This document shows, piece after piece, positions 45,001-64,000 of a DNA stretch of 64,000 nucleotides. Numbering within the stretch: the first letter of the stretch is position 1; the number at the start of each line of letters is the position of its first letter. A program made the translations under genes and the position numbers. The notes under the pieces are model-generated. The model had not been told where the DNA came from and did not search any database. It saw nothing but the letters and a program-made list of their open reading frames with translations. The stretch is from Amphiscolops sp. MND2022 (taxonomy: Eukaryota). The DNA is taken from assembly GCA_964187785.1 (NCBI GenBank), contig OZ076415.1, positions 28,458,001 to 28,522,000 on the forward strand, read 5' to 3'.

Positions 45001-46749
45001 TAATGATCGTTTCACATTGGACACAGGTTGCAGACATGAGGTGACTTCACCTGTTTTTTGGTTCTCTGTCATTATATTGCAATTTTACGACGCCAATCGG
45101 GGAAGATTTGATTTTTCAAGAATTGACAGAAGTTGGTGTTCTCACCTACCAAAATGTGTTTTCAAGAATTGACAAACGTTGTGCACTTCAAAGAAAATGG
45201 CAGTGCCGCCAAAATGATTGTAGAAATCTCACACACTAATATTAGCAGTGCAAAAGTGAAATTTTCAAGAAATGAGAAAATTGATTTGTGGATTCTTCAC
45301 AATAATGACAATCTATGCTGCACTTGTAACAATATTGGTGTGAGGGTTCGTCGCATTTTGTCATTTCCTGTACTTTTTTCTCATTTCTTGAAAACTTTTC
45401 TGATTTCTTGAACACTTTTCTAAATTCTTGAACACATACCTGGATTCTTCAAACACTAATGATAAATAATTCTAATTTCTTTCTGGATTCTACAAAAAGT
45501 TAACTAAACTTTTTTAACAATAACTCTAAATAAAATCGACGCAGAATCGACAGACTGATACACACAGTGACTGATTGGAACAAGAATCAATGATGATTCT
45601 GTCCATAAGTGTTCTATTTGAATTCATTTCCTAAAAATTCTCTCTGTTCTTCAGATATCTCCAAACGACTCTTCACGAGCAAAGCAACGACTCCATGAGT
45701 GTATTAGCGACAGCTAGTTCGTTCTTTAAATGGCTGACCACGAGTGAATATGATCAACACGTAGACTTCAGACATAGTTTCACGTTCCAATGACAATTAT
45801 TTTTGTCTAGAATTGTGCTATTTGAAATCAAACATTTTATATCCAAAGTTGATTCGTTCATAGAATAAATTTTATTTTATTTCAATTTTTTTTAATTTAG
45901 ATTTTTGTCATTAGTTGTAAGACTCCCTGAGTGTATGACTCCATGAGTGTATGAACAACAGGTGAGCAATACATTTATGATTAAATTGTAACAACCCCGG
46001 GTGTGTATTCCTAAATAACTATAAATGATTCAGAAACAATGCAAATAAATCTAAGAGTGAACAGTTGCAGTTTTTGATTCTAAATCATTTGACTCTGACT
46101 GTGGAGAGCCAACTCGGAACGACTGGACTTTTTTTGTACTACTAGCATTTCTGAATTAGCAAAATAACGACTCCATGAGTGTAAAAACAGATGCTAAAGA
46201 ACATTTTGCCGGTGCATATCGAAAGAAAACACGGGTATTGACAAACACGTTAGTTCATGCGTGTCGTTGATGCTTAAAACTAATAACAATGGTTATTTAA
46301 CAAATTTAATAACAATGGACAGTTCATGGTTCATGTGTGTCATTGACAGTCAATATTTAAAAAAGAGTAGGTATCAAAATCAAATGAATAAGTTTCAATG
46401 TAAAATGTTTGCCCAGACATCTTCGTTATAAATTGTCCACTACTGAGTTTTGTCGAACGATGTCCCTGTACGTATTGAACCCTCCGCCAATCAATGTGAT
46501 ACAGCACTTGATGCACGACACGGCAAATGTTTTTTTTTTGATCAGAAACCGCATCGTTTTGATGTATTTGTAACTGTGACTGTATTTGCCAGCCTTTCGG
46601 TGCCACAACTTCCCCAACACTGAATCCCATGATTCATGCCACCCCTTTTCACCTGAGGGGATTGAGATATTGAATGTCAAATCTCTGTTATTCTCAATTC
46701 CGAGTGGAGAGTTCATCAGCCAAACACAAGATCCTTGCATATCCAGACC

Positions 46750-47153
46750 GCGACGATAGGGCCAGTCCCACAGCGTTCCTCACCGCTGCAAATAAAGAAC
46801 ACACCTTACTGATTGGATGTTCGACGCTGCCAACCAAGTTTGCATTGCTTTTGTGGCTCAAGGAGTTTCCTTCAAAGAACACAATTTTGCTCGAGGGCAT
46901 TGTGATGGAAATGTTCTCAAAATGTTCCGACACCATTGTCACGAGAACAAGTGGTTGCTCTTTTTTCCATACGAGCTTCAGGCTGCGAATGATGGATGGT
47001 TCCCCACAGTGATCCATCACTTTCCCACCTTCATGCCAAATCCCATTCACACGTGGGAAATGATGAGTGGAACTGGAACATCATTGAAAGTTGAAGATTT
47101 TGTCATCAAGTGGAAAACCAATGGTCAGACAAGACACAAGATTTACATCGAGG
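46750..47153 (+). CDS. Unassigned probable coding exon inside the giant element
   Basis: Open frame WMFDAANQVCIAFVAQG...KWKTNGQTRHKIYIE ending at a GAG|GTATG donor. No motif recognised. Confidence 0.3.
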
Positions 47154-47849
47154 TATGTCTTTAAACTCGACACTTTCAATTTCAACTTCTACATTAACAT
47201 CTTAACAACCTATTTCAAATTCTATAGAAACATTTTAACAACCCCAGGAATATCCAAATGTTCTAAGCAGCATTTCTGTACCGAAACCATAACGACTCCA
47301 GGAGCATGTAAATTCGTAGAATATTTCTAAACTAACACCCTAACTACTCCGGGAGCATACTTTTTTAAAATACATTCTTGTGTTAGGCACACATCATGAA
47401 ACTGATTTTGCTGAGTGGTGGCAAAATTTTACCATGGACAAACGCTTGAAGGGAAATCATAACTAAATTGATGGGCGTAGATCTGTTTCCCACTGGAAAC
47501 CAAGTGGTCAAACCAACAACGCTGAGACAAGGTGTACACAGAACAATTGGTACACCGACTGGAACCGATGAGTCACTTGAACCCGTGAACAATCATTCCA
47601 CAATGCAGACAAATCCACCAAAGCCCGAAAACAATCAGTCTACAACTTACGTAGTTCCCCGAGGGAAAAGAGTAATTAAGACTCCAAAAATCTCCAATCA
47701 CCTATTGGAAGTTCGTTTTGCGTCATGCAAAAAGAAACAACGTCGACTCTGAAGCTCTACTAGACGTCATCCTTCACTTTTCCAGAACAAAACAGCCAGA
47801 GTACTTAAAATCAGTCATTTAAAAAATCTTCCCTAACTTTCAGTCGCGA

Positions 47850-49680
47850 GAAACAATAATCTCCAATGTTGCGGTTTCCCTCAAGTCAGGCAAAGTAGAA
47901 GACTTGTTATTTCCTCAATCTTCGAATTTGAAAATCAATAAGTTAAGAAAAATCCAAAATCTCGTACCATCATACCGTGCCGTCCAAAGATACCAGAGTC
48001 AGATCATGGAAAACTTTATCTCGGTGTGTAAGCCTGAAGCCACCTTTTCTGGATTCCGTTGTGATCTGGTGTCATGTGTCAAACTTGCTGCGTGGATTTT
48101 TTTACAAGAGAGACGAAATATCTGAGCTCAATATAGGATGGTTGTGAAATTAGCGGTGTTGATCACACAAGGCTGTGTTTCAGAATTTTGAAAACTTCTC
48201 TCATAAAATACCAGCGCAATCACTAATTATAATATTTTGTTTCAGTGGTAAGTTGTAGTTATTTTTACTGATTCTGTAAATTCCAATTGCCACTTAGTAA
48301 GGTAATTTCATTACTGGGAAGAATCCACAAAAATAAACGAACTTTAAATTCGTGGACCACTACTTTCAGTTTGCACTCTCGCATGTTTAATTATTCAATT
48401 ATACATTCTTCACACCTTGTATAGTAATTAGTCTTTCGATTATACTGCTTAATTTACCGTGGTATACCAAATCTAAAACAAACAAAGGGTGTCAAATGTC
48501 AATCGAAACATCAAATGTAATTTTTGTTATGATATGTTAAGCATTCCGAGGCAAAGACAGCAGATTCGTACTGGAGCAAAATTTGGGACCAGAGATAGCT
48601 GGGAAACAAGGACGGGGTGGCTGTACAAGCAAACTAAAGAGTTGAGTACACAAGGGGCGGTGGTCACCTATACTGGTACAATCCTTTTCTGTACCGTCTC
48701 ATATTGGCTATAGACAGCGATGCAGCGAACCAATACCCATCAGACTTGGCGCTGTATGTGGGATCTGAAAAGTATCTTCCAACAGATGTGGATGATTATA
48801 CTGGTATGCGTCACAATCTGAAAGCTCCGTTCAGAAAAGAAACTACACAAAACTCCCTTGTGTACCTTGAGGATATAAGATGTGTCATGCCAGATGTAAC
48901 GCACATGATCACAAGGTGCGAAGAGAGTGATCTCCGCAAAGCTGCACAGAAAATAGTGAACAAAAAACCAGTGTACAAAGTGCCCCTGCAGCAGTTGGAA
49001 AAAAACTGTACTCGAAAAGCATTGAGAAAGCCGAAATTTCAGTTTGACTTGCACATGAAAGGATCTGAAGTGAAAAAAGGAATCGTTGGACCAGTATCGC
49101 TATCCGGGACATCAGCGCTAATAGCTATCGCTGAAGAAGAAGAATTTGAACAAAATGTTCCGAATCTTTTTGAAAATGTGTGGAAAACGCAATCCTTTTT
49201 GAGACGAGAGACAACACAAACAAAGAAAATGCGCGAGCTGTCAGCAATGCCTTTTCAGTTCTGAAATCCATGCACCCACCCATATCAAAATCAGACAAAT
49301 TCACGACAAACGACTATGTGAATCTCTTGCAGCATAGTTTGAATAAATGCACTATTATTTTGCGGGCATCCAAAAACGGTCTAAACACGGAACAGTTCAA
49401 GTTTTGGTCTGAGTCATATTATCAATCGTCGTTGCTTCTTTTTTCCGGGAAAGACGGACTCACCCCCTACAAAATGAAAATGTTGCTAATCCCACAGATG
49501 ATGGACGCAGGGTTTGTTCGGAGTCCATGGCATCACATGTGTGAAGCGATGGAGAAGTCGAACCATCATGCTCACAAGGACTTCCAAACCAAAACATTAA
49601 GGGCGGAGGAAAATTGTACAGCCATGATCCTTTATTCTAGGAAGGTTTCTTTTTCTACTGCCATTACCTCGACATAGATT
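47850..49680 (+). pseudogene. RAG1/Transib-like DDE transposase, frameshifted
   Basis: Ordered motifs LVPSYRAVQRYQ...SGFRCDL, DGCEISG (first Asp), LAIDSDA (second Asp candidate), CVMPDVTHMITRCE (D..H...R box), GLTPYKMK...CEAMEKSNH (Glu). Confidence 0.62.
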
Positions 49681-49789
49681 CAAAACACAAATAAAACCAG
49701 TGAGCGATACATTTGACAAGCTTCAGAAACAATTCCAGCAGATAACAACCTTATCCGAAATATGCAAAAATGTAGTCAAGCCTGTAATG

Positions 49790-50245
49790 ATAGAAGTAGG
49801 TGCCACTAGAGATTCAAGTAGGCTTCTGAGTGGACTTCGTTTTCACGTGGTTGGGCACTTTACTGGTTTAATTGGAAAAGTTGTGGTGGATATAATTACT
49901 CGTTTGGGGGCGGGGGGAAGGACTGAGTAAAGACAAAGCTCTTGGGCTATGAAAGCGCCATTCCTCAACCCCAAATTGTTTTGTAGCAGTGGAAAATGAC
50001 ACTGAATTGCTCATGGCAACGAAGAGTGAAAACAGCTCATGATCCGGATCAGACAGCGACACGTGTTCATCGAACACTCAACGAAAAATAGCTCCAGCAA
50101 AATAGTGAAAAAGGCAACAAATCAAGGATCAATCAGGGTATGCAAAGAATTTGCCGCCACTGATTTCAAGTTTTTGAGTATAGCATACATTCAAGATGTT
50201 AAAAAAAGGCTGTGTTTTGGACCCTTCCGAATACTTGTTTGTTAA
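49790..50245 (+). pseudogene. BRCT-like domain downstream of the transposase
   Basis: LLSGLRFHVVGHF...VVDIITRLGAGG, then (frameshifted) TPNCFVAV and FKFLSIAYIQD, matching BRCT N- and C-terminal patterns. Confidence 0.48.
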
Positions 50246-50987
50246 AGGTGCGATTGAGTGAGCATGTCTAAAATACCAACGTCCATTATTTGAGAGACAA
50301 AGAGATCTCGAAATATCAGACCTTGATTACAGATCATTGATTACTTCATTGAAAATTTCAAGAAAAAGAGCAAGAGAGGAAAGCAACCAGACGATAAAAT
50401 TGCTAATCATTTAAGCCAGTAGGCAAAAAAATGTCGGAGAAATTTGATTTGTTTGAATTTGTATGACAAGTAGTTTACTTCGATCAAAATAAAAATTTTT
50501 ACACTTATATCGTTTTCGAAAACCACAGCTTGCGTTTCAAAAGAGCCCTAGAAATGAGAAAGTAACTGTTAAACATGGTTTGCAGAATCAATATATCAAT
50601 ATTGAACCATCGCTAGTTATTGTTTAAATGTAGTGTACACTAATTTTAAACAAGCGTTGAAGCCAATTTTGTGGATTCTTCAGATTGCAATAGCTCAGCT
50701 TGCGCTAAAAATGCGCTCTAGAATTGAGAAACTAACTATTAGGCCTGGTTTAAAGAATCTATATATCAATGTTAAACCATTCCTAGTTATTATTTGAAGG
50801 TGGTATATTGCATTGTTTTTGGGCAATCGTTCGAGTTGGTTCAGCCGATTCTCAGCTGTAAATATAATAAATTACGTAACGACTCCGCGAGCAGATACAG
50901 TTCACAAAAACCATTCTAAACCAACTAGGTAAAAACTCCAGGATCTTATTATTTTTTAATAACCAATCGATTGGAAATTTTTGAATT

Positions 50988-51400
50988 CTAACTGAACATA
51001 ATTTCCGAATACTCCAATGGCAATGCCGCAATGTCAGTCTTAGCTACCATGACCAGGACGTCTTTGTTCTGTGCTATGTTTACCAGCACCGGTTTCACAT
51101 TTGCTTCCTTGGACGACTTGTGATTAATTAATCTCGCAAGGCACCGGTTGTTCGGATGTTCGTCGCAGATTTCCTTGGAAGAGTCAACATTGGTTGTGGT
51201 TACTGCTGCGTGACCCAAGCTTTTCACGTGGACGTCACAGATTGATGGCCATTGCTGTGACTTAATTCGTCTGCCAAGCGCCCTCTTGAAGTTATCTGTT
51301 TGTTCGTTATGAGCTGGCAGGAACAAGCCTTCGTGGCGAAGTGAAACTGTTGGAGTCTGTAGTCCTCCGGATTCAATCGATTTGTGACAATCTTGAACGT
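50988..51400 (-). pseudogene. SET domain (KMT5A/PR-Set7-like), internally deleted
   Basis: QQWPSICDVHVKSLGHAAVTT (N-terminal strand); VDSSKE...LARLINHK...ANVKP...LVMVAKTDIAA...EIMFS* (RxxNH and ELxFxY boxes, the Tyr position being TAG). Confidence 0.68.
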
Positions 51401-51581
51401 CTGTAGTTATTAGAACAACATGAAATTGTTAATCAAATGTTATTTTGTTCACTTCGCCCCAGCTATTATATTGCTGGTAAATTTTTTTTGCAGTGTAAAT
51501 GAATCCTTCTCATGCAATGTAGCTGTTGCTTTACTGAAGAAAAAAGTCATTGCGTCAAATGCTGCTGGTCAAAAAAGATAC

Positions 51582-53100
51582 CTTTTTCAGGTCTTCTTCA
51601 GTGTTCCATGTGTTCTTGGCGTAAAACTCTATGAGTCGCTGCCTGGTGGGTTCCGTGTGGTTGCGTTTGCTGCCACAAAACGCGATGATTTCTTTCGCTC
51701 GCAGCACTTGGCGGGCATATCGTTGCGCATTGAGGCGTCTGACAACGTAAGGACCCAGCTGTCGCTCAGTGATACTGTGTATTGCAGCCCAGGCCTTGTC
51801 AACACCTGCCCAGATCTCAGCGATGGCCTGCGTTTCCCTCATGAATCCGGCATTCCTGGATAAAGGCAGAGGAAGGGCTTTGTGGACACACTCCAGCAGT
51901 ATATCATCCACTGTTTCCCGGGCATCTTTTCCATCTTCAACAGAGTGAGAACGAAATTGTAAAGCAACACAACTGCGGAAAATTTGAATTGTGTGATGAT
52001 AATCTGACAAAAGAGTTGTTACATGAAAGAATGAAAATGATACTTCCAAAAAATCCCGCACTCGTTACTTGTAACAATAAGTTTTACAACTTCAATGCTC
52101 TCAATGCTCCTAATGGTTCAATTTTTACCTTGTCCATGAACTCCTCAGCAAAAGATCTGGAGTTGAAGTTCGCATTCCCTTTTGAAGTTACAAAGAAATG
52201 CTCCGTAGCAACCTCTTCGACGCCACTATCGTCCCGTTGAAATGCTCTCGTCACAATTCTTGGTGATTTCCGTTGGAAAGTTGGCCTCACATTGAGGTGA
52301 TACACCCGCATAGCATTCACCACCCATCGTTCAACACGGTGTTCCACTCGAATAGTGTTTCCTAAAACGAATTTAGTTCATAGTTCTAGATTTGGACATT
52401 TATTTTCTTGCCTTATGTTCAAATTTATATTCTCATATCAACAATTTATACGTCCGCATTTTATTTTGTTGAAAACGTGAAACCATATGCTAATAATTTG
52501 ATATCTACACAGAACATCCTACGTCGTTTTCAAGTTTTAGAAAAAGGGTCCAGTATATATACCCAAAGATGGTTCGAGAATCAATTCGCAAGGGTCATTC
52601 TCGCTCAAGTCATCAAGTTGTATTATAACTTGGGTGACGGCATGCACTGTCACACCCAAAATGCTTTTCGTCATCACTGTCACTGGCTCGGCATACATGT
52701 ACAGGTACGATATAATGCCGTGGAAGAGGGTTAATTGTTGCTGGTATGTCAGCGCTCTACATTTGTTGTACGTTTCTAACCCCCTCTAATGTATTTTTAG
52801 TATGGTGTCCGACTTTCGCTGACCACTGCAGTCGGGGCAATTTTGGTTGTGACTCTAAACACGTCTTAGCAGGAAAGTCGAAGCTGCGCTTTACGGAGGT
52901 GATTGTAGAAAGTGCACACGTTTCGTATTGAGTGTTTTTGACTTGATTGTCGGATGTGTACTACTTGATGTGCTGCTTTGAGTGAAATACGGAGGGTCCT
53001 TTCGCTTGTTGCCAATATTTGAGAAAAGTTGGTTGGACAAGGGATCGTAGTGCCCATATACGACTCGTGGAATGAGAAGTTTTTTTGATTTCGATGAATC
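51582..53100 (-). pseudogene. Degenerate Crypton-type tyrosine-recombinase region
   Basis: LTLFHGIISYLYMY...KSILGVTV (box-I-like); RWVVNAMRVYHLNVRP...EHFFVTSKG (Y...vRP...fF.t.kG pattern); C-terminal AQRYARQVLRAKEII...EPTRQRLIEFYAKNTW. Catalytic residues not confidently located. Confidence 0.42.
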
Positions 53101-54084
53101 GACGCCGGAGTGCTATGAAAATGAATTTCATTAGGGGTTTGTGGAGGTTGTAAAGGAGTTAGGACTGGACTGAGTATATTGCGTGAAGTCGCTGTTACAA
53201 ATTGAGATGTTTCTTAGAGGTTGTTCCGACATTATGAAGTTTTAGTTTACTCCGATATCAAAAGGGAAAACAAAAATTTTCAAAATTGAGCTGCTGGGAA
53301 CTGCAAGAGTAATCGGTCTAGAATTTTGAAGAATATTCTTAAATTGGTTGAACAGCTGGTTATTGCGAGAGTAATCGGTCTAGAAGATGGAAGAATTGAT
53401 TTTGAATAGTGTATTTATAGTTGTTAAATCAATTGGAAAAAAATCGAACGCATTTGTTGACGCATATTAAACTGCCCATGACGCTGCATTTATTGGAAGC
53501 GTTTAACTAATTTTTAAATTACAATCAGAGTTTGTCAAAAATTTACTCAAGTAACAACTGAGTGCAAAAGTAATCGATCGCAGTTAGTAGCTTTTAAAAA
53601 TTTGATGTTTAGATGATTATTTTAAAATAATCTATGACACCCCTGATTGTGTTAGATTTGGTACATCGGGTTGATTTCAAACTACACGGTGAACTACCCA
53701 ATAGAAATGAGGCACTAATTACTTATCATGGTGTGAAGAATCTATAATTGAATGATTAAACATGCGGTAGTGCAAATTGAAGGTAGTAGTACACGAAATC
53801 AAACTGAACACGTTCGTTTATTTTTGTGGATTGTTCACAACAATAGGACTGCTGTGAACCTACGTTTGTAAATTTTGTACAAAACTGGTTTGGTTTATGA
53901 ATATTTGAATTCTCGAATACAAAAATAATCTACAATTGCATCAACCTTCAATTGAAAAATGAGCTTATGGTTCCTAAACAAACGCTCCTGGAGTCATTAC
54001 AAAATAATGGAAGAGTCTTTTTTGCATCCAGAAAAATGAAATAATCGAACTCCACTAAAACGTATGAAAATGCCAGATATTTAC

Positions 54085-54510
54085 CTGACATCACGTATTC
54101 GGAAGGATCCAAAACACAGCACTTTTTCTCAACATCTTCAATAAATGTCGCCTTATGGTTTTGAAAAAGTATCAATCAAAAAAAATTATTTGATTAGAGA
54201 GGTTGTCAAAAATCAATCATCACTCAGAACAAAATATAAAAATGTATACAAAATAACGATCAGAGAAGCGAAAGATCGATTTCGTGTGAGTATTTATGTG
54301 TGCAACACAACGGCATAAAGGGGATGGTAGCGCAGTTGATATTTCACATGGGTATGTAATGAAGCTAGACGCGTTGTCTACCACCGGATCGATTCTCACA
54401 TAGACACTGTTGACTCTATACAGACCACTCTGTATTCCTCCATATCGATTTGGTAAACGACATCGTTCCACTTCACAGCGATCGGGGGGCATAATAGAAG
54501 ATCCAATCAA
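54085..54510 (-). pseudogene. BAH-like segments
   Basis: Short AG/GT-bounded exon ATFIEDVEKKCCVLDPSEYVMS resembles the BAH motif (i.gkC.Vld...Y); upstream SFITYPCEI resembles the BAH F..nE box. Confidence 0.4.
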
Positions 54511-54524
54511 CTGCGCTACTGCAT

Positions 54525-55085
54525 CCCTTTTTGATGTGAAAAGGATAAATCATTGTTGATCGTTATTTTTACAGCGATAGGAAGGCACTATTGAAAATCC
54601 ACTGCCTTCAGGGGTGTTCATTAAATAATTATGGGTAAGAATACTTGAAATGGATGAAATAAAAATTTATATTTCTGCAATCAAATGAACAGAAAAAATT
54701 TTTTCGAATCTGTAGACAAATTATTATTCTTGAGATAACTAAATCTAACTAAGAACGTTTAATTCAACCTATCGCCAGCCAATTAAATTCGAACATACAG
54801 AAATCTTGAGCTAATTTCCAGCTTGAGCTAATAATTCTTTTAACAAAAAAATAAAACTCTTTATTTTTCCACTATGAAAATAAAATAATTGGTTTTTAGG
54901 CAACAATATTAATCGAATAAAATATAAAACACCCCTGACTGAATCCCTTTTTGATGTGAAAAAAGATCAGTTGATCGTTGTTATCTTCCTTCACAGCGAT
55001 AGGAAGGCACTTTTGAAGATCCAATGCATCCCTTTCTGATGTGATGCATCCCGTTTCGTTGGTATTTTTCACAGCGATAGGAATG
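54525..55085. repeat. Dispersed short repeats ATCCCTTTTTGATGTGAAAA and CAGCGATAGGAA(GGCACT)
   Basis: Copies near 54523/54572, 54943/54995 and 55028/55073. Confidence 0.7.
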
Positions 55086-56269
55086 CGCAATTGAAGGTTC
55101 AATCCGCCAAATCCGTTTTTGATGAAAGCCGTAATGTCTATTTTCCATAACTAAAAAGAAATATAAACTATTAAATTATAAAATTATAAAACATCATTTA
55201 CTCATTATAAATGGAAACTTTCCCCACACACACACACTTTTTATAGAATAAGTGTGAACAAAGTTTGTATTCCAACTATAAACTGTCACTCTGGAAATAC
55301 CTGTAAAATTGATGAAATCTGGTCTGTAATCAAGTAGTTTTGTTATTATAGGTAATTGCAAAAACATCATCTTGAAAAGTGTGGGGAGGAGGAAAGTCCT
55401 AAATGGACATCACTGGATGAGAATAAAGAGAATAATATAAATCTGTATATTGGGTTAGGCGTCGAATTGCGCAGTGGAATCGGGGGACTAATTACTATAC
55501 ATGGTGGGAAGAATCTACAATTGGATAATAAAACATGCGAGAGTGTAAACTGAATGTATTGGTCCAAGAATTCAAACCAAATTTGTTCGTTTATTTTTGT
55601 GGATTCTTCACAACAATAGGACTGCTATGAACATACCTTTTATAACTTCATGCAAAACTGGTTTGCAATTTTGACTCATTTGAAAAAAAAAGACAATTCC
55701 TTTAGTAATCACGCTGTCTAAGCTCGTTTAAAAAATTTCAAGTGGTAACTGTATCTTGATTTTCTTGGACCATATGGTACTGATCGATCTCTTAGTTGAA
55801 CAATTTGTTCAACTAGGCAGGTATCTTATCAACACTATTGTTGATCATTGTTCTTTTAACAACCGCTACCACATTCCACCGCCAACAATTGACGGTTGGG
55901 AATTTTCATTAATATACTAATGAACATAACTAAGTTTGTTTCTTTTTATTTGGTACAGTTGAAGTTATGCGCTGATGGAGCAATCACAATGACGTCTCGG
56001 TACTTCATGAAATCAGACTGCAGACAAGGCCTGACTTCGAAAGAGCGGGTAGCAACCTATTTTTCTGCAAGGTTCCATTCTGAAGCAGTAACATGCAGTC
56101 GTAACATCTGGGAGCGATTGTCTACGGGAGGGGAACCATTGGATGACTTGGAAATTCGGGAGCATACAAATTGAAAGAAGGTTCTTTATTGCAGATTTTG
56201 TACAACGATTACTTTGAAGGTAAACGTTTTTTTGAATGCATAAGTACCATTTTATTAATAAACATCTAC

Positions 56270-56545
56270 CTCTCCGGTGGCTTCGGATCAGCTGCGGAGT
56301 GGCTGCAATCTCTCGAGTGACCAATGTGAGACTATCTACGGCCTCGCAGAGATCGTTTTCAGCATACGGTGGCTGGTTGCATGGGGGGATGGCTGGTTGG
56401 AAATTGGAACCGACCATGATCATCGGTTTTCGTTCCAGGACGGGGGCCAAGTTCGTCTTCTTAGGTTGATCAAGAAGCTTCCTCCTGGATAAAGTTTTTT
56501 GCTTGGCTTCTCGTCGAACACAGCCATGTTGAAGGCAGGAAACAC
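56270..56545 (-). pseudogene. ELM2-like exon
   Basis: KPMIMVGSNFQPAIPP matches the ELM2 opening I-x-VG-x-x-[YF]Q-A-x-IP; the exon is bounded by CAG| and |GT. Confidence 0.5.
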
Positions 56546-57224
56546 CTGTAACAAACACGTTTATCTTAACAGGTTTATTGGGGAGTATTTGGGGTCTAAA
56601 TACTATTGAGATACTGTTAGGATACATCTCTACCCCTCGTAAAATTATTCAATCTGGGAATTGCTCACAACAACAGAACAACGAGCATTTTTGCTAAAAT
56701 ACTTACTTCTGTAGTGAAAGCTTCTCCGTCCTTCATGTGTTCTGCCACTTTTCGGAAGAGGTGCCTGTACTCATCACCCAAGTAGTTGGGGCACAGCTTG
56801 CGGTAGTTGTACAGCAACACACTCCACACTGTCGTCAAACGGTGATATCTGGAATACATAAAAATTATACTCCAGGTAACAATTCACAAAAGAAAAATTG
56901 GTGGAGGGATGTTAGATGTTAGAAGCTTATGAGATCTGACAAATTGTTCCGGAGTCGTTACAAAACTTTGTTTGGGGGGATTGTTTCTAATTGGTCCCCA
57001 AAGATGCTTCCGGAGTCGTTACAAAATGTTGGGATGGATTGTGTCTTCAATAACATTTTGAATTTATTGCCTAATATGCTCCCGGAGTCGTTACAAAATA
57101 AAAAAGGGAGGTGTTTCTGCTTCTTTTGATGTCTACAAAGGGCTCCTTCACTTTCTCGTTTCAGCTATATAGAAAGTAAAGGAAGTATAGTGATGTTGTA
57201 TATTTACTATATAAAAAACGTTAC

Positions 57225-59087
57225 CGTGTATCTTCTTCAATGTCGAAGTTAGCATCAACAATTAGTCAACTGTGGCCAAAACTCAGAAAATTGGCACCGA
57301 GTATCACTGAGTCGCCCTGGGTCAGGACACAGTGAATCTACTTGGCCCTTTGCGTGGATCCTGTGACATCCCCTTCTAGCGTCTGTATTATTGTTCTAAA
57401 TATCACACATAATAAACTTAAATGGGAGTTTCGATAGAATTCAGTTGGGTGCTCATTTTTAGGATTACCCGAACAATGAACTTTTTATCTTGAAGAGATT
57501 TTCTTTTTTCTATACACTGAACGAACATTTTAGGAAATTGACGTGAAGTATGATGTTTATACTTACAAGCTGCGAGGATCTTCTCACTGTACTGCTGGAA
57601 GAGTTTCAAGTTCTTCTTTGTTGGCTCAACAAGTCAGAAGATTTTCTCACACAACAGTACCACGTAGAAAACTGACGTGCTTGCGTATTCAATGTGCCAC
57701 GGGGTGACAACATTTGTCGTTGAAAAGTAACAGGTAGTTCCAGGTGCTCTCCGTCAAGTACCCATCGCTCTGAGAAGCTGCCAGTTTTGACTCTACATAG
57801 CGGTCGATTGCCGCATTTTGTACCGCAGTAGGTGGTGAAAATATCTAAAAACGCGTGTACGTGAACTTTTTAAAATGCGAATTTTGCTTTATTATTTTTA
57901 GGAAGAAAATTTTGCAAAGACGATTCTGTATCGTTTACATATGGGAACTGGGCACCTATTAAATCTAACTTTTCAGTCACTTTCAAAGTTATTTAAAAAG
58001 TGGTTCTTCACTCTATTGGCTAACTACTTTCAATTTTATCTAAATATCTCATTACCGCATGTTGAAGGGTGGCATCTAGTACGTTCACAGGAAAGAGTCC
58101 CTCACGGGCTGCTTCTGGGCCGCAACGCTGTTCTGCCAGATAATCGTCTCTAGTCAGATTTCGTATCTGCAAATTCATTTTGTACTCTAGTTCAAATGAT
58201 TTTTTGTTGAATGTGAAAACGCAGTAGAATTGAGACAATAGTGACTAAACATGTTGTGAAGAATCCACCTTTGGATAATAAACCATTGGAAAATTAAACA
58301 GAACGTAGTAGTCCATGATTTCAAAACTACACGAAGTATACAATTTTGTGGGTTCTCCGCAAATATGTGATTTCAAAAATTAGGTTGTGGCTGCGTGAAC
58401 GCAGTAGAAATGGGACAATAATGATAAAACACGTTGCGAAGAATCTACCACTGGATAATAAAACATTGAAAGTTTAATTTGATGGTAGTGGTTCATGATT
58501 GTAAAGCTACACAAAACATACAGTTTTGTGAAATCTCCTCAAAAATGTGATTTCAACAATTTTGTTTTGGCTGCGTGAACGCAGTAGAATTGGGACAATA
58601 ATGACAAGACACGTTGTGAAGAATCTACCACTGGATAATAAACCATTAAAATATTAATTTGAAGGTAGTTGTCCATGATAAATCACAACGATACAAATAT
58701 AAAGTTTCGTGGACTTTTCACAGCAATAAATATACGCGTTTGTGTGCGTTCTCTTAAATCCAGGAAAGTTTTTCTGTAAATTACCAGCAAGTTATAGTTT
58801 AAAATCTTACCTCGTTCACTTTTGCCGACTTTGCAGTTATGGGGACTTCCGGGTTGGCAACATGCTGCAACAAATGTTCTGCTAGAGGCGGAAACTGAGT
58901 TGCCTTGTCCTCCGGATCATGGGGAATGACGAGGCCTTCCGCGTTGTCCCTGGCGCCTCTCCACAGGATGGGGAAACCATGGGCCAAATAACAGAACATT
59001 TTCTTCGTCTGATCTTCCACGGTCCCATTCCAAACAACGCACTTTGGAACGGTGCTCTGACGCGTCCCCCCGATGTGCTTGTAGTAC
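57225..59087 (-). pseudogene. JmjC histone-demethylase domain, KDM2/KDM7(PHF8)-type
   Basis: GFPILWRG...GLVIP; VNVLDATLQ; FSPPTAVQ; STTNVVTPWHIEYASTSVFYVVLLCEKIF*LVEPTKKNLKLFQQY; *IHCVLTQGDSVILGANFL. The H-x-E...H iron ligands are retained. One frameshift; stops at conserved Trp positions. Confidence 0.87.
58220..58720. repeat. Three ~180-bp tandem units containing GAAGAATC(C/T)AC, related to 53640-53900 and 55480-55670
   Basis: ACGCAGTAGAA...GTGAAGAATCCACC...GGATAATAAA at ~58219, ~58399 and ~58579; lies in an intron of the JmjC gene. Confidence 0.85.
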
Positions 59088-59351
59088 CTATGTACAAAAA
59101 ACAACTACTTGTTCAACTACAAGGTCTTTATTATCCTGGCTCGGAAAAAATATTTATTTTGAACTTCCTCTAGGCATGAAAAGTTTGTGTTTTGACATCT
59201 GTTGTATTCTGGTAAGGTCAGCTATAGTTTTAACATAATAAGTATTCAATTTTCCTTTCATTTCTTTGAAACTTGCATTAACATTATGCCTAAAAATACT
59301 TGAGTACTCTATGTATTCTGTAGCAAAGCTTTCAACACGAAGTTCCCTCAC

Positions 59352-59939
59352 CTGTAAGTGCCGTCCTTAGCCGACTTTCTGGGAAACCGCGAGAAGTTCA
59401 TGTCCTTGAACCTGTGATTCGGCACTCGCTCCAGATGCCGCAGCAGATTGCTCCGTGAAGAAAACTGCTGTTCACAACCCTCACAGCTTGTTGGCTTGAG
59501 CTTCCCTGTTACAGTCTCTAAAATAAAACAAAAACCAACTTCAAAACATGGGCGTTACGGGTCTATACCGCAAGCACAACTATAAAGTTATCATTAGTTT
59601 CTCAAAAGTGTAAAAGATACTTGTATTCATATATAACAAGACTGTTTCTGTAGATTGGTTTGTAATGACATCGTAACTTACTGTATTTTTTCAGAGCTGG
59701 GGAAAGACCTTGAGCCAATAATTTCGCCCTCTTGGCACAGCTCAGGGTCTGCTGATGACGTTTGAGGGCATCTTTTGTGCACACAGGTTGCAGACACAGG
59801 TTGCAAGTGAAGCTACCACTTCCGCTCTCCACCTCCGGCACCGGTTTGGGTCCTTGTCTTTTTCGTGTCTGTTGTAGTTAAACAACCTGGTCGACTCGTA
59901 AAAGCACTTCGGACACATCATCTTGGGTGTTGGCGGCAT
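59352..59939 (-). pseudogene. Three C2H2 zinc-finger motifs (exons 1-2)
   Basis: CPKCFYESTRLFNYNRH; CNLCLQPVCTKDALKRHQQ; CEGCEQQFSSRSNLLRHLERVPNH. One frameshift in exon 1. Confidence 0.8.
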
Positions 59940-61893
59940 TTTCTGGTTTTTAAGGAGAAATTTAGTTTTCTTTAAAAATTTGTTTCCTTGTGTTCTGTTT
60001 CCATATTTCTTTATATTTATTGCACACCTGGAGCCGTTACAATCACCTGGCTAAACGTTAACTTGTTGTACTCTATCCGTTGCGCTCTTGGAGTCGTTAC
60101 ATCTTACTAAACATTTGTATTTATTCCTGTTGTTATCATGCTCATGGAGTCGTTACGAGGGGTTCCCAAATAACATCAGAGCAAATAGCATACAATTAGT
60201 TTCAAATAACACAAAATTGAAATGGTTTTTACTAAACATGTTGTTTGAATTTTTTTTTCATTTTTATGTTATTTGACAGTAATTTTGTTTCTATGTTATT
60301 TGCACGTATGTTATTTGGTATGTAATCGTCGTTAAAATTTTCTAAACACTCGTTTCATATCTTACTTTCATCGCAGTCTTGGAGTCGTTACATCTAACCA
60401 AACAATTATTGTGCCCTATTTCTATGGTGCTCATGGAGCTGTTAACTCGGTGTACTCTATTCATTCCGTTAAATGTTTGGGACAGCTAAACTTAATTGGT
60501 ACCAAGAAAAACACTTGACTTACCTTAGTTGAATGTCGAATTAGTTTGATTGTTCAAATTGGAGTCTTCGCTTGCAGTCTTCGTGAAATTCTTGTATGCT
60601 TCGGGAAATTCTTGGAGTCTTCAGGAGATTGAGAAAACGTCTGATTGTCAGCAGCACTGGTTGTTAAATAACCTTATTGGATAAACCGCGGGATTTTGAA
60701 GATTGTTTACATGACGCACCAAATTCTGCGAGTCATGGTCACGTGACAAGAAGTTCTTTCAATCACCGAATCAAATTCGAGTAAAAATCATGAAAGTATT
60801 TGCTCATTTGAATGGCTTAATATTTCTTGGACAACCTGATACACACTCAATTTTTGTGAATTAATGTAGTCGATAAACCACGGGAAGTTACCCTCCCCCC
60901 CACAGACACACTTTTTAAGATGATGTTTAAGTTTAGGTTTAACTGCAACAAAAACTCATCGCTGTTAGCAGGGGGGTTAACATTTTCGCGCTTTTTGTAG
61001 GGGGGGGGGGTTTAAAAAAGATCCCCGACAGTCAATATAAGAAGAGGATGACAATATTTGATAATATCATTTGAACGCTCCTGGAGTCGTTACAAAACTA
61101 ATTTACTCATTTCAATGCGATTCTTTTCAAGCAATACTCAATACAATCTATATTCGATCCTGGAGTGACTCTTTTCAAACAATATTCGATACAATTTATT
61201 TGAACGCTCCTGAAGTCGCTGCAAAAATATCGTTTTCATTAAAATGATAAAAAGTTTTTCGAAGTTGACAATTGGAGGGAGGGGTCTTTAAAACATTTTC
61301 TTTGAAAGCTCCTGGAGTCGTTACAAAATTGGCTCTTTTCTGTTATTACCCCCCACCAGTTCAATTCCCCCCACTTAGGCGGTCAAGTGAAATTGTCATT
61401 GAATTAATATTAACAACCAATCAAATTGCTGTTTTTTATAACTCTAACTGCAACTGAAACTCATCGCTGATAGTGGTGGGGAAATAAAATTTCCGCGCTT
61501 ACTGTGGGGGAATTAACAGAAAAGATCCACAAAACTATTTGTTTCATTACAAGTAACAGGCATTTTTTTAAATTTGGCAAACAGAGAGGACGTATTTTTA
61601 AAAATTTTTGCTTGAGTGCTCTTGGAGTTGTTTCATTTTTATTTCTGCAGTTGATGTTTTGAAAACCTTTTCCTTGAAAACATTTTGTCGGGCACAAATA
61701 CTAGCTGGGATTACAAATCTCAGCGAAGTATGCTTTTGCCCAGTATAATGTAGTTTTAAGAGACTCTTCGTTTGGGGATCACATAGTGTCGCTCATAACA
61801 AGACCCACGTCGTGAACGTGGCCTTTAAAAGGTCTCAAAATCTAATTTACAAATTCTACTACAAAAACATACTAACTACATTTTTACAAAAAG

Positions 61894-62109
61894 TTAATTG
61901 TACAAAATACTAACTACAGGTAATCTACAGTAAGGACATCTTATAATAGCTGCATTTGCTAAACTATCCAAATAATGTTTTATACACTCTCTACAGGCTA
62001 AATGTAATCTATGATCTAGATGGAAACTTTGTATTTCCTCTGAGCTCAAGTTTTCAAAGCATATAAAACATTCTCTCTTCTTGGGAGCAACTGCCTTCTT
62101 CACCCTCAT
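61894..62109 (-). CDS. Small RING-finger protein (71 aa), putative E3 ligase
   Basis: ATG-initiated ORF: CFICFE...HLDHRLHLACRECI...IRCPYCR. Confidence 0.72.
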   Translation of the reverse strand: MRVKKAVAPKKRECFICFENLSSEEIQSFHLDHRLHLACRECIKHYLDSLANAAIIRCPYCRLPVVSILYN

Positions 62110-62284
62110 TTATAAGGGATAGAGTAAGTAATGATTGAGCGAAAAGATAGAAGAAGAATAACGATTTAGTTTTTTTAGAGAAAGCAGAGATTTGCAGAGT
62201 AAGTTGAGATCAGTGAGTGCAGAGAGGAATCTTAATTGCCAATAATTCCTTACAAGGGAATAATTCCTGACAATAGACTTTTTT

Positions 62285-63010
62285 AGAAGTTGGCAAACAA
62301 GGGGGGGAGAATAATTTTGAACATTCTTTTTAAACAGTTCTGGAGTTCTTACAAAATTATTTGTTTCATTACAATTAGAAATAGGAATTTTTCAAATTTG
62401 GCAAACAGGGGGGAGTATCTGTTTGAAACATTCTACCTAAACGCTCCTGGAGTCGTTACAAAACAATTTGTTTCATAACAATTGGAAATAAGAATTTTTT
62501 AAATTTGGAAAACAGGTGAGAGTATCTGTTTGAAACATTCTACCTAAACGCTCCTGGAGTCGTTACAAAATAATTTGTTTCATTACAACTAAAATTCGAG
62601 ATTTTTTAATTTGACAAACATGGGGGGTTTTAATTACTTGGACCAATCTACTTAATCAATTCTGGAGTCGTTACAAAATTATTTGTTTTATTACAAATAG
62701 AAATAGGGATTTTTTAATTTGACAATTATGGGAGGGGGGTAATTATTTAGAACATTCTACTTTAACAATTCTGGAGGCGTTACAAAAGTATTTGTTTCAT
62801 CACAATTAGAAATCTATTTTTTTAATCGACTAACAGGGGGAAGGGTTTGTAACTATTTTAAACATTCTACTTAAACGCTCCTGGAGTCGTTACAAAATTA
62901 TTTGATTCATTGCAAATAGAAATAGGGATTTTTTAATTTGACAAACAAGAAGGTGTATTTATTTGAAACATTCTAGTTTAACAATTCTGGAGGCGTTACA
63001 AAATCATTTG
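62285..63010. repeat. Subterminal tandem array, about seven ~108-bp units each with (CT)CCTGGAGTCGTTACAAAA
   Basis: Motif near 62340, 62444, 62552, 62661, 62770, 62878 and 62986. Confidence 0.9.
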
Positions 63011-63453
63011 TTTCATCACAATTACTAGGAAGTTTTTAGAATTCGGCAAACAGGGAATATATTGTGAAAACCATTCAACATATTCATCAAAATTATTCAT
63101 ATACAAATGAAAGAATCCACAAATTTTATTTAATGGTATTTCAGTGAATTCATACGAAACGAAGAATCCACAAAAACTTGGTACCTCCATACAGTGACCT
63201 AATTAGCGAAGAATCCATGTCAACTAATAATTGCTTAGGGAAGAATCCACACAATTTCAAGATTCGAGAGAAACGAGAGAAATTTTCTTTTGGCGATTCT
63301 TCGCAGGTTACACACGGTATTAGTGCAAGAAACCAGAAAATGTTTCACTCCACTTTTTAATTCTTGAAACGCATGTGTTATAATGCCGCTGAAGAATCCA
63401 CATAAGACTACAACAGGTTTGTTGCAGTCACTGTTTTTCCCCGATTGACATCG

Positions 63454-64000
63454 TAATGAACTTGGTCCTTCACCAATGCTCTGCACAACAGATGCCTTCC
63501 TCCACAGCCGTCTTTTTTGGGTTGCGTCTTGAGGCAGTTGTACAATGAAGCCATAGAAACAAAAAAAATTCCCGGCAACAGTTTTTGCTCGTTCAGTTGG
63601 AGTCTTCTTTTTGAGCACTTGTCACTGCCACAACAGATGTTTGTCTTTGAAGACTACACAACTGACCTGGGGTTTCAAGGTTGACACCTTTGTGCACCTG
63701 GTGTTTTTGCTGGAAGTTGTTGCAACGAACACTTTAGGATTGGTTTTGGTATTCGTTACGTTTTCGTTTGGAGTTTCATTAACTTTCGGTTTTCCAGAAA
63801 GAACTTCATGGAGAACCTCTCGTGAGCTTCGGGTGTGTCCTTCAGCCAGCCGTTGAAGTCAATCACAGTCGGTTGGTTCAAATTGCGCTTCACTGTATGC
63901 ATCGATCAAGATTCGTCCGTGTTTTATGGAAGCTTTTGGACAGCTTGACTAAGCAGTGAAGCACTCAAAACATCTTGAACGTAGTTCAGATATCAAAAAA
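63454..64000 (-). mobile_element. BEL/Pao element 2, 5' part (gag zinc-knuckle region); continues beyond the window
   Basis: KKTPTERAKTVAGNFFCF and SLYNCLKTQPKKDGCGGRH are homologous to KEAPTERAKVVIENKFCFSCFNGQHSFRNCP of element 1. Confidence 0.8.

What the first reader, a model, noticed from the sequence alone, without database searches (positions are those of the whole stretch)
45685..63005. Polarised GGAGTCGTTAC motif arrays: a candidate self-recognition code for anti-silencing
Seen: about 8 copies as AACGACTCC(A/G)NGAG in the left part (~45687, 45922, 45937, 46167, 47291, 47343, 50877, 50934). About 20 copies occur as the reverse complement CTCCTGGAGTCGTTAC in the right part (~53985, 56950, 57009, 57081, 60028, 60088, 60144, 60379, 61077, 61206, 61309, 62340-62990). 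They lie mostly in introns and intergenic DNA, flip orientation between ~50.9 and ~54.0 kb, and I did not notice them outside the element. Established: Arabidopsis VANDAL TEs encode VANC proteins that bind short motifs accumulated in their non-coding regions and remove silencing; CACTA elements have subterminal transposase-binding arrays. Inference: the motif is the binding site for the element's C2H2-JmjC protein (an animal analogue of VANC) or for the transposase.
Basis: partly seen in the sequence, partly recalled or inferred. Interest (0 to 1): 0.84.

Follow-up and report, generated by a model that had tools for sequence, protein, structure and literature searches.

The report
Conserved motif arrays inside giant transposon
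A 17-base motif really is repeated about 28 times through the non-coding DNA of an active 18-kb RAG1-like DNA transposon and has been kept by selection. It is probably a docking site for one of the element's own proteins, but which protein is unproven, and the striking orientation flip is not conserved in a sister family.

Summary
GGAGTCGTTAC (full form GCTC-NN-GGAGTCGTTAC) occurs 20 times at one mismatch or fewer against 0.66 expected. All copies lie inside one element (window 45083-63458). They sit on the minus strand up to 50.9 kb and on the plus strand from 52-54 kb. Genome-wide the 17-bp form occurs 547 times against 0 for the control, clustered in other copies.

The element has TIRs beginning CATTACGACGCC, a 2-bp target duplication, a RAG1/Transib-fold transposase with a BRCT tail, and a C2H2-JmjC-ELM2-SET cargo gene. 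Three copies are 100% identical, so the family moved recently.

The motif core is better conserved than its flanks between subfamilies. It is letter-perfect in a sister family (F1b) that is about 25% diverged, although site positions turn over.

- In four F1b copies every site points the same way, so there is no flip.
- A second motif, GTGGATTCTTC, occupies the true subterminal zones and is the better transposase-site candidate.

Best reading (about 0.4): a self-marking platform for an element-encoded DNA-binding protein. The binder is unresolved and anti-silencing is untested.

The parts
45083..63458 (+). Whole element (18,376 bp), an old and degenerate F1 copy. It is flanked by a 2-bp target-site duplication, AA (45081-45082 and 63459-63460).
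   Evidence: Own-genome BLAST homology stops at these points. Flanks were read. Five of five copies with both ends show a 2-bp duplication (AA, GA, GA, GT, AA).
45083..45105 (+). Left terminal inverted repeat. It reads TTTTACGACGCCAATCGGGGAAG here; most copies read CATTACGACGCCAATCGGGGAA.
63436..63458 (-). Right terminal inverted repeat, CATTACGATGTCAATCGGGGAAA.
45288..45450 (+). Left subterminal motif-B sites (GTGGATTCTTC), pointing inward. Intact copies have 4-6 of them.
63110..63401 (-). Right subterminal motif-B array, five sites pointing inward, 60-350 bp from the end.
45684..46180 (-). Motif-A sites of the left arm at 45684, 45988 and 46164, plus half-sites at 45916-45954. They start about 600 bp inside the left end.
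47289..47356 (-). Two motif-A sites inside the short first intron of the transposase gene.
   Evidence: GT...AG intron read in the intact copy L003, 3847-4004.
46817..50245 (+). Transposase gene, RAG1/Transib fold with a BRCT tail. It is frameshifted in this copy.
   Evidence: 628-aa open frame in intact copies; BRCT; invariant D, D, E; RAG1 6cg0 at E 1.8e-8; HzTransib at 3e-5.
50876..50945 (-). Two motif-A sites in the spacer between the convergent 3' ends of the transposase and SET genes. These are the last minus-strand sites.
50991..60050 (-). Cargo gene: C2H2 fingers (59351-60050), JmjC (57421-57869), ELM2 (56016-56648), SET (50991-51428).
   Evidence: SET E 3.7e-13 in the intact copy.
53984..54000 (+). 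First strong plus-strand motif-A site, in an intron of the cargo gene. A motif-B copy lies 164 bp upstream.
56945..57094 (+). Cluster of three motif-A sites between the ELM2 and JmjC exons.
60024..60445 (+). Cluster of five motif-A sites in the intron just upstream of the ATG-bearing zinc-finger exon.
61077..61634 (+). Four dispersed motif-A sites at 61077, 61206 (degenerate), 61308 and 61618.
61897..62109 (-). RING-finger exon.
62302..63024 (+). 107-bp tandem array, 6.7 units with one motif-A per unit, 450-1150 bp from the right end. Unit number varies between copies (2-7).

Best explanation
Motif A (GCTC-NN-GGAGTCGTTAC) is a selectively maintained, family-specific protein-docking site. It is kept at 10-28 copies per element in the introns, spacers and inner subterminal zones of an active RAG1/Transib-fold DNA transposon family.

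I read it as a self-marking platform. An element-encoded, sequence-specific DNA-binding protein recognises the element's own non-coding DNA through many redundant sites. It then regulates the element's transcription or chromatin. It does not position the cleavage complex; the TIR plus the subterminal motif B fit that job better.

New sites arise by local tandem and segmental duplication, which is why neighbouring sites share orientation.

Shown here: the motif, its specificity to the element, its conservation, the turnover of its positions, its avoidance of exons, and the gene content. Inferred: that a protein binds it, which protein, and what binding does. My split for the binder is C2H2-JmjC-ELM2-SET cargo protein about 0.25, and transposase N-terminal region or the left-gene product acting as an autoregulator about 0.15.
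For: - Enrichment and exclusivity: (547 genome-wide against 0 for the control).
- Selection between subfamilies: the core is more conserved than the flanks between three subfamilies about 10% apart. With sites chosen in one lineage and measured in the other two, identity is 0.94 against 0.81-0.83 (p 8e-5 and 8e-4). This holds despite a hypermutable CpG in the core.
- Selection in a sister family: F1b has about 75% nucleotide identity and 73-84% transposase identity, yet carries 10 letter-perfect 17-bp sites in 17 kb.
- Positions turn over while the sequence does not. The sites in the F1 transposase intron are absent in F1b, and F1b has sites where F1 has none.
- All 18 sites of the intact copy avoid the homology-supported exons, which make up about 43% of the element.
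- The terminal 450-600 bp lack motif A and carry motif B instead. B-like arrays recur in relatives whose transposases are only 38-41% identical, whereas A is restricted to F1 and F1b.
- Four F1b copies have no exact A core in their right terminal part. A is therefore not needed at both ends.
- The element encodes zinc fingers joined to chromatin enzymes.
- Family F2 (zinc-finger exon 44%, transposase 60% identical) has different motifs that share only halves of A.
Against: - No binding data of any kind, and no RNA runs were listed.
- The zinc-finger exon is only 59% identical between F1 and F1b although the motif is identical. The three fingers are dispersed and partly C2HC, so they are an unlikely reader of 15 specified bases.
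- The transposase N-terminal exon diverges in step with the zinc-finger exon (73% and 42% against 59% and 44%). Co-variation therefore does not single out a binder.
- Long runs of co-oriented sites (13/13, 9/9, 9/9 and 6/6 in F1b) are not needed for a simple marking function. They are explained only by appeal to duplication history.
- The 17-bp length could also suit a bipartite transposase DNA-binding domain.
Confidence: 0.4

Rival explanations
1. Transposition cis-elements. Motif A would be an outer tier of subterminal binding sites for the transposase or an accessory protein. These sites would pair or bend the two arms, as TNPA sites do in En/Spm, so that the ends of an 18-20-kb element can meet.
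For: - Mirror orientation relative to the two ends in six F1 copies.
- A seven-unit array 450-1150 bp from the right end.
- Right-end sites are kept in short deletion derivatives.
- Weak resemblance between the TIR tip (TTACGACGCC) and the inward-read motif (TAACGACTCC). The weight-matrix score is in the top 0.1-0.3% of background.
- F2 carries an A-like array (GTCGATACAAA, three 42-bp units) antisense in the 5' region of its transposase gene.
Against: - The F1b family has multiple copies with open transposase frames, yet all its sites point one way and there are none in its right terminal part.
- Sites lie up to 9 kb from either end, and their distances from the ends are not conserved.
- Several deletion derivatives keep only 39-195 bp of the left end, with no left A site. 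Whether these derivatives ever moved is unknown.
- The TIR resemblance is not significant after allowing for the offsets tried (about p 0.13).
- Motif B sits where transposase sites are expected.
- Solved RAG1 and Transib complexes use the TIR or RSS only.
Confidence: 0.2
2. Host-factor sites. Motif A would be a recognition site for a host transcription or architectural factor, acting as enhancer, insulator or loop anchor, that the element has multiplied to secure expression or insulation.
For: - Clusters sit in the first introns next to the start codons of the transposase and cargo genes.
- Long co-oriented runs recall orientation-dependent architectural sites.
Against: - The exact 17-bp form is essentially absent outside this family: 547 hits, clustered, against 0 for the control.
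- Isolated single hits of the 11-mer on contig C1 number about 16, no more than the control predicts. A host factor should also have host targets.
- The motif is replaced in families F2 and L027 within the same or related genomes.
- Fifteen specified bases is unusually long for a general host factor.
Confidence: 0.15
3. No function. The copies would be neutral remnants of a few duplicated segments and satellite-like arrays.
For: - Several site subtypes share longer flanks and arose by tandem or segmental duplication: the 107-bp, roughly 56-bp and roughly 1.85-kb units.
- Unit number varies between copies.
Against: - The different subtypes share only the 17-bp core.
- The core is more conserved than its flanks.
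- The motif is perfect in a lineage about 25% diverged, where 0.75^15 is roughly 1% per site by chance.
- It is maintained in three recently active subfamilies.
Confidence: 0.08

Closest known systems
VANC target motifs of Arabidopsis VANDAL21 (Mutator-like) elements
   Same: A short, family-specific motif accumulated in the non-coding parts of the element's own sequence, partly as tandem repeats. Related families carry different motifs. The element itself encodes candidate binding and chromatin-acting proteins.
   Different: - This is an animal-type genome: a Cys-loop receptor gene lies next to a copy.
- The transposase has a RAG1/Transib fold, not a MULE fold.
- The candidate effector is a C2H2-JmjC-ELM2-SET protein unrelated to VANC.
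- The motif is 17 bp with 15 specified bases, against about 9 bp.
- Sites are strictly co-oriented over many kilobases.
- Binding and loss of silencing are untested.
En/Spm (CACTA) 12-bp subterminal repeats bound by TNPA
   Same: Family-specific short repeats near the ends of a large TIR transposon whose termini start CA.TA, with a short target duplication. A second element-encoded protein besides the catalytic one is plausible.
   Different: TNPA sites lie within about 180-300 bp of both ends in mixed orientation. Motif A starts 450-600 bp inside, runs through the whole element, is co-oriented, and is missing from the right terminal part of sister family F1b. The CACTA-like position is held by motif B here.
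Transib TIRs and RAG recombination signal sequences
   Same: The transposase model superimposes on the RAG1 core, HzTransib and BbRAGL. An invariant D, D, E is present. The right TIR can be read as a 7-mer, then 12 bp, then an A-rich 9-mer.
   Different: The target duplication is 2 bp rather than 5 bp, and the tip reads CATTACG rather than CACNNTG. There is a BRCT tail. RAG and Transib systems are not known to use dispersed internal motif arrays.

Membership tests
VANC-type self-recognition (anti-silencing) motif arrays | A family-specific short motif accumulated in the element's non-coding DNA, including tandem repeats | tested here: met
VANC-type self-recognition (anti-silencing) motif arrays | The motif changes together with the binding protein between related families | tested here: inconclusive
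   F1 and F1b have an identical motif with a zinc-finger exon 59% identical. F2 has a changed motif with a zinc-finger exon 44% identical. The transposase N-terminal exon diverges in parallel (73% and 42%).
VANC-type self-recognition (anti-silencing) motif arrays | An element-encoded protein binds the motif and removes silencing marks | not testable with these tools
   No protein-DNA tool was available, and no RNA or chromatin data were listed.
CACTA/En-Spm-type subterminal repeat arrays | Repeats concentrated within a few hundred bp of both ends | tested here: not met
   The nearest A sites are about 600 bp (left) and 450 bp (right) from the ends. Sites reach 9 kb inside. F1b has none in its right terminal part. 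Motif B does meet this feature.
CACTA/En-Spm-type subterminal repeat arrays | Required in cis for transposition | tested here: inconclusive
   Deletion derivatives without left A sites exist, but each is a single copy, so transposition after the deletion is not shown.
Transib/RAG1 transposase superfamily (the carrier element) | RAG1-core fold with a catalytic D, D, E | tested here: met
   The AlphaFold model has pLDDT 71.8. Foldseek gives RAG1 6cg0 at E 1.8e-8 and HzTransib 6pqx at 3.3e-5. The acidic residues are invariant. No sequence-level hit to PDB or Pfam.
Transib/RAG1 transposase superfamily (the carrier element) | 5-bp target duplication and CAC... termini | tested here: not met
   2-bp duplication in five of five copies, with a CATTACG tip.
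CMC (CACTA-Mirage-Chapaev) group | 2-4-bp target duplication | tested here: met
   2 bp.
CMC (CACTA-Mirage-Chapaev) group | Sequence similarity to CACTA or Chapaev transposases | tested here: inconclusive
   No Pfam transposase family hit on ten homologues. Chapaev is placed within the Transib superfamily in PMC4411706.

The most novel reading that the evidence does not exclude
An animal counterpart of the plant VANC system. A giant RAG1-like transposon would carry its own zinc-finger-guided histone demethylase and methyltransferase. It would seed its non-coding DNA with a private 17-bp address code, so that the enzyme rewrites chromatin only on copies of its own family.
Probability: 0.2. Interest if true: 0.85.

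Novelty: new variant of a known kind. Interest (0 to 1): 0.58.

Why it matters
Transposons that encode their own sequence-specific anti-silencing factor are established only in plants. Here an active animal family offers all the ingredients: 100%-identical 19-kb copies, a RAG1-fold transposase, chromatin-enzyme cargo, and a private, selected 17-bp motif. That makes the idea directly testable. One DAP-seq or EMSA experiment with three candidate proteins would say which one reads the motif.

Even on the conservative readings, the family shows two things. A RAG1-like transposon can carry elaborate two-tier repeat systems, with motif B at the ends and motif A inside. And the orientation of such sites can be rearranged between sister families without loss of activity.

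Tried and rejected
- Pfam and PDB sequence searches of the window's transposase exons and of homologues found no transposase family. The protein-atlas look-ups gave only weak, unrelated leads.
- The TIR tip as a weak motif-A site is suggestive but not significant after allowing for the offsets tried.
- A scan of metagenome contigs for the 17-bp pattern returned only single, scattered hits on unrelated contigs and no arrays.
- RNA evidence: no RNA run was listed in two searches.
- I walked 3 kb upstream in family F2 to reach its left end and test TIR-motif co-variation.
- A zinc-finger recognition-code reading from my own knowledge gives GAG for finger 1, which matches the CTC/GAG arms. The fingers are dispersed and partly C2HC, and no ordered triplet match exists, so I treat it as uninformative.
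- Resemblance to the CTCF core needs a gap and fails at the invariant positions. Rejected.
- An RNA hairpin from CTCCNGGAG is impossible because the loop would be 1 nt.
- An RNA-level or transcription-coupled role is disfavoured. The motif is antisense to the cargo gene in F1 but sense to it in F1b.
Full report
**1. The observation**

GGAGTCGTTAC at one mismatch or fewer occurs 20 times in the 64-kb window against 0.66 expected, and no shuffle reaches that number. All hits lie between 45684 and 62999. Extending the sites shows a bipartite motif, GCTC-NN-GGAGTCGTTAC, often followed by AAAA. At two mismatches or fewer it occurs 17 times against 0.06 expected. A weight matrix built from 50 instances finds 28 sites scoring 11 or more, all inside the element; the best score outside is 7.5.

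Seven sites on the minus strand lie at 45684-50945 and 21 on the plus strand at 52052-62999, with no exception. Counting clusters rather than sites (5 left, 8 right), a perfect split has a chance of about 2 in 1287 by my own arithmetic. 45922 and 45937 are half-sites in a 16-bp tandem. 61206 is degenerate. 62302-63024 is a 107-bp tandem array with one motif per unit.

**2. The carrier**

Own-genome BLAST of both edges fixes the element at 45083-63458. The terminal inverted repeats read CATTACGACGCCAATCGGGGAA; the window's left tip is TTTT instead of CATT. Five of five copies with both ends show a 2-bp target duplication: AA, GA, GA, GT, AA.

The plus-strand gene has no Pfam or PDB sequence hit. 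It belongs to a very large family in this 1.07-Gb genome. An AlphaFold model of a 1027-aa homologue (pLDDT 71.8) matches the RAG1 core (6cg0, E 1.8e-8), HzTransib (6pqx, 3.3e-5) and BbRAGL. Acidic residues are invariant in the motifs WGDG, CPDxxH and ExxEKSN, and there is a BRCT tail.

The minus-strand cargo gene carries C2H2 fingers, JmjC, ELM2 and SET, with SET at E 3.7e-13 in an intact copy. A further minus-strand gene lies between the left end and the transposase.

The window copy is old: about 11% diverged, frameshifted, and with a 1.2-kb deletion. The family, however, is active. Three copies are 99.9-100% identical over 19.2-19.5 kb, and three more are 98.5-99% identical. Kapitonov and Koonin place Chapaev within the Transib superfamily (PMC4411706). 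The 2-bp duplication and the CA.TA tip resemble the CMC/Mirage style more than canonical Transib.

**3. Specificity to the family**

The exact 11-mer occurs 861 times genome-wide against 299 for a reversed control. That control lacks the CpG, so it overestimates chance. The 17-bp form occurs 547 times against 0. Listed hits fall mostly into 15-25-kb clusters that coincide with transposase, end or zinc-finger hits. Isolated hits on contig C1 number about 16, no more than the control predicts.

**4. Selection**

Three F1 subfamilies about 10% apart share most site positions. I chose sites in one lineage and measured identity between the other two. The 11-bp core is 0.94 identical against 0.81-0.83 for the flanks (p 8e-5 and 8e-4). 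The third comparison, between the two closest lineages, is not significant. Most core changes are CpG to TpG or CpA.

The strongest evidence comes from a sister family, F1b. Its transposase exons are 73-84% identical and its alignable DNA about 75% identical. It carries ten letter-perfect 17-bp sites in 17 kb. Chance conservation would be about 1% per site. Site subtypes with different flanks share only the core. In the intact copy all 18 sites avoid the homology-supported exons.

**5. What weakens the 'polarised code'**

(a) Four F1b loci have all their sites on one strand: C1:100.476-100.491 Mb, C1:40.168-40.192 Mb, C2:47.144-47.160 Mb and C2:53.225-53.241 Mb, at 9/9, 13/13, 9/9 and 6/6. That strand is always opposite to the transposase and the same as the zinc-finger gene. 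None has an exact core between the zinc-finger exon and the right end. F1b copies share this layout, including an inverted internal segment, and keep long open transposase frames. The layout therefore predates their spread. The mid-element flip is not conserved. The motif is antisense to the cargo gene in F1 and sense to it in F1b, which argues against an RNA-level or transcription-coupled role.

(b) Positions turn over. For example, the two sites in the F1 transposase first intron are absent in F1b.

(c) A second element-specific motif, GTGGATTCTTC (motif B), gives 15 hits against 1.45 expected, all inside the element. It fills the true subterminal zones, 60-450 bp from each end and pointing inward. 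B-like arrays occur in distant relatives. L027 has a transposase about 41% identical, SET and JmjC cargo, 30 copies of TAGCAATTTGGATT, and no motif A. The L018 family is 38% identical and carries GTGGATTTTG next to a 136-bp array. Motif B is therefore the better candidate for the conserved transposase-end interaction.

**6. Related family F2**

F2 has a transposase 60% identical, SET 59% and the zinc-finger exon 44%, with the same gene order. It lacks motif A. It does have three 42-bp units containing GTCGATACAAA, matching the 3' half of A at 10 of 13 positions, antisense in the 5' region of its transposase gene. It also has four GCTC(C/A)C(G/A)GTT(T/C)AGAAA sites that share the 5' half of A. 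So the motif evolves between families.

**7. Interpretation**

The signature is a constant sequence, fluid positions, high copy number and confinement to non-coding DNA. The motif is absent from the terminal zones and dispensable at one end in F1b. This fits a redundant self-marking platform better than a precisely placed transpososome component.

I put this reading at about 0.4, with the zinc-finger cargo protein as reader at about 0.25 and the transposase N-terminus or left-gene product at about 0.15. A transposition-enhancer role in the manner of En/Spm is at about 0.2, host-factor sites at about 0.15, and neutral remnants at about 0.08. Co-orientation over up to 25 kb remains only partly explained by duplication history.

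**8. Limits**

- No RNA runs were listed.
- Deletion derivatives lacking left A sites exist, but each is a single copy, so they do not show that motif A is dispensable for transposition.
- No tool here tests protein-DNA binding.

Noticed in passing
window 45288-45450, 63110-63401, and internal copies at 48318, 50671, 53826, 55508, 55599 and 58258-58618: A second element-specific motif, GTGGATTCTTC (15 hits against 1.45 expected). It points inward in both subterminal zones. It also sits in a 180-bp internal tandem array (58218-58679) and in roughly 155-bp internal repeat units. Related TGGATT(C/T)T arrays occur in distant relatives.
   Followed up: partly
window 63430-63458 (minus strand); L009 right end: The right TIR can be parsed as CATTACG, then a 12-bp spacer, then GAAAAACAG. 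That is a heptamer-12-nonamer-like layout reminiscent of an RSS, next to a RAG1-fold transposase. The left TIR diverges after base 22.
   Followed up: no
L001-L006 (C12:44.297 Mb, C13:2.002 Mb, C13:46.30 Mb): Three 19-kb copies are 99.9-100% identical, with a 628-aa open transposase exon. The family appears to be transposing now or did so very recently.
   Followed up: partly
L003:1821-3463 (minus strand); window 46343-47080 (partly deleted): An extra gene lies between the left end and the transposase. The upstream exon has two Tudor/chromo-like barrel signatures. The downstream exon gives only weak protein-atlas leads to GT-A glycosyltransferases, including TET-associated ones (score 0.83-0.85).
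   Followed up: partly
L027 (ENA ERZ1742291 contig, 11.7 kb): A distant relative (transposase about 41% identical, SET convergent, JmjC on the other strand). It carries 30 copies of TAGCAATTTGGATT in clusters and head-to-head pairs.
   Followed up: partly
L044+L031 (C5:22.254-22.261 Mb) and five near-identical copies: Family F2 has the same gene order as this element at about 60% protein identity, and its copies are 99.2-99.6% identical to each other. It contains a 284-bp internal palindrome carrying GTGACGCGTCAC.
   Followed up: partly
window motif sites at 53984, 60024, 61618 and 62336, and elsewhere: Most departures from the motif consensus in old copies are CpG to TpG or CpA at the central TCG, as expected if the site is methylated in silenced copies.
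   Followed up: no
genome-wide: The RAG1-fold, BRCT-tailed transposase superfamily is very abundant in this genome. First-look candidates number 743-1510 per query. Many families have intact 1000-1175-aa intronless open frames.
   Followed up: no
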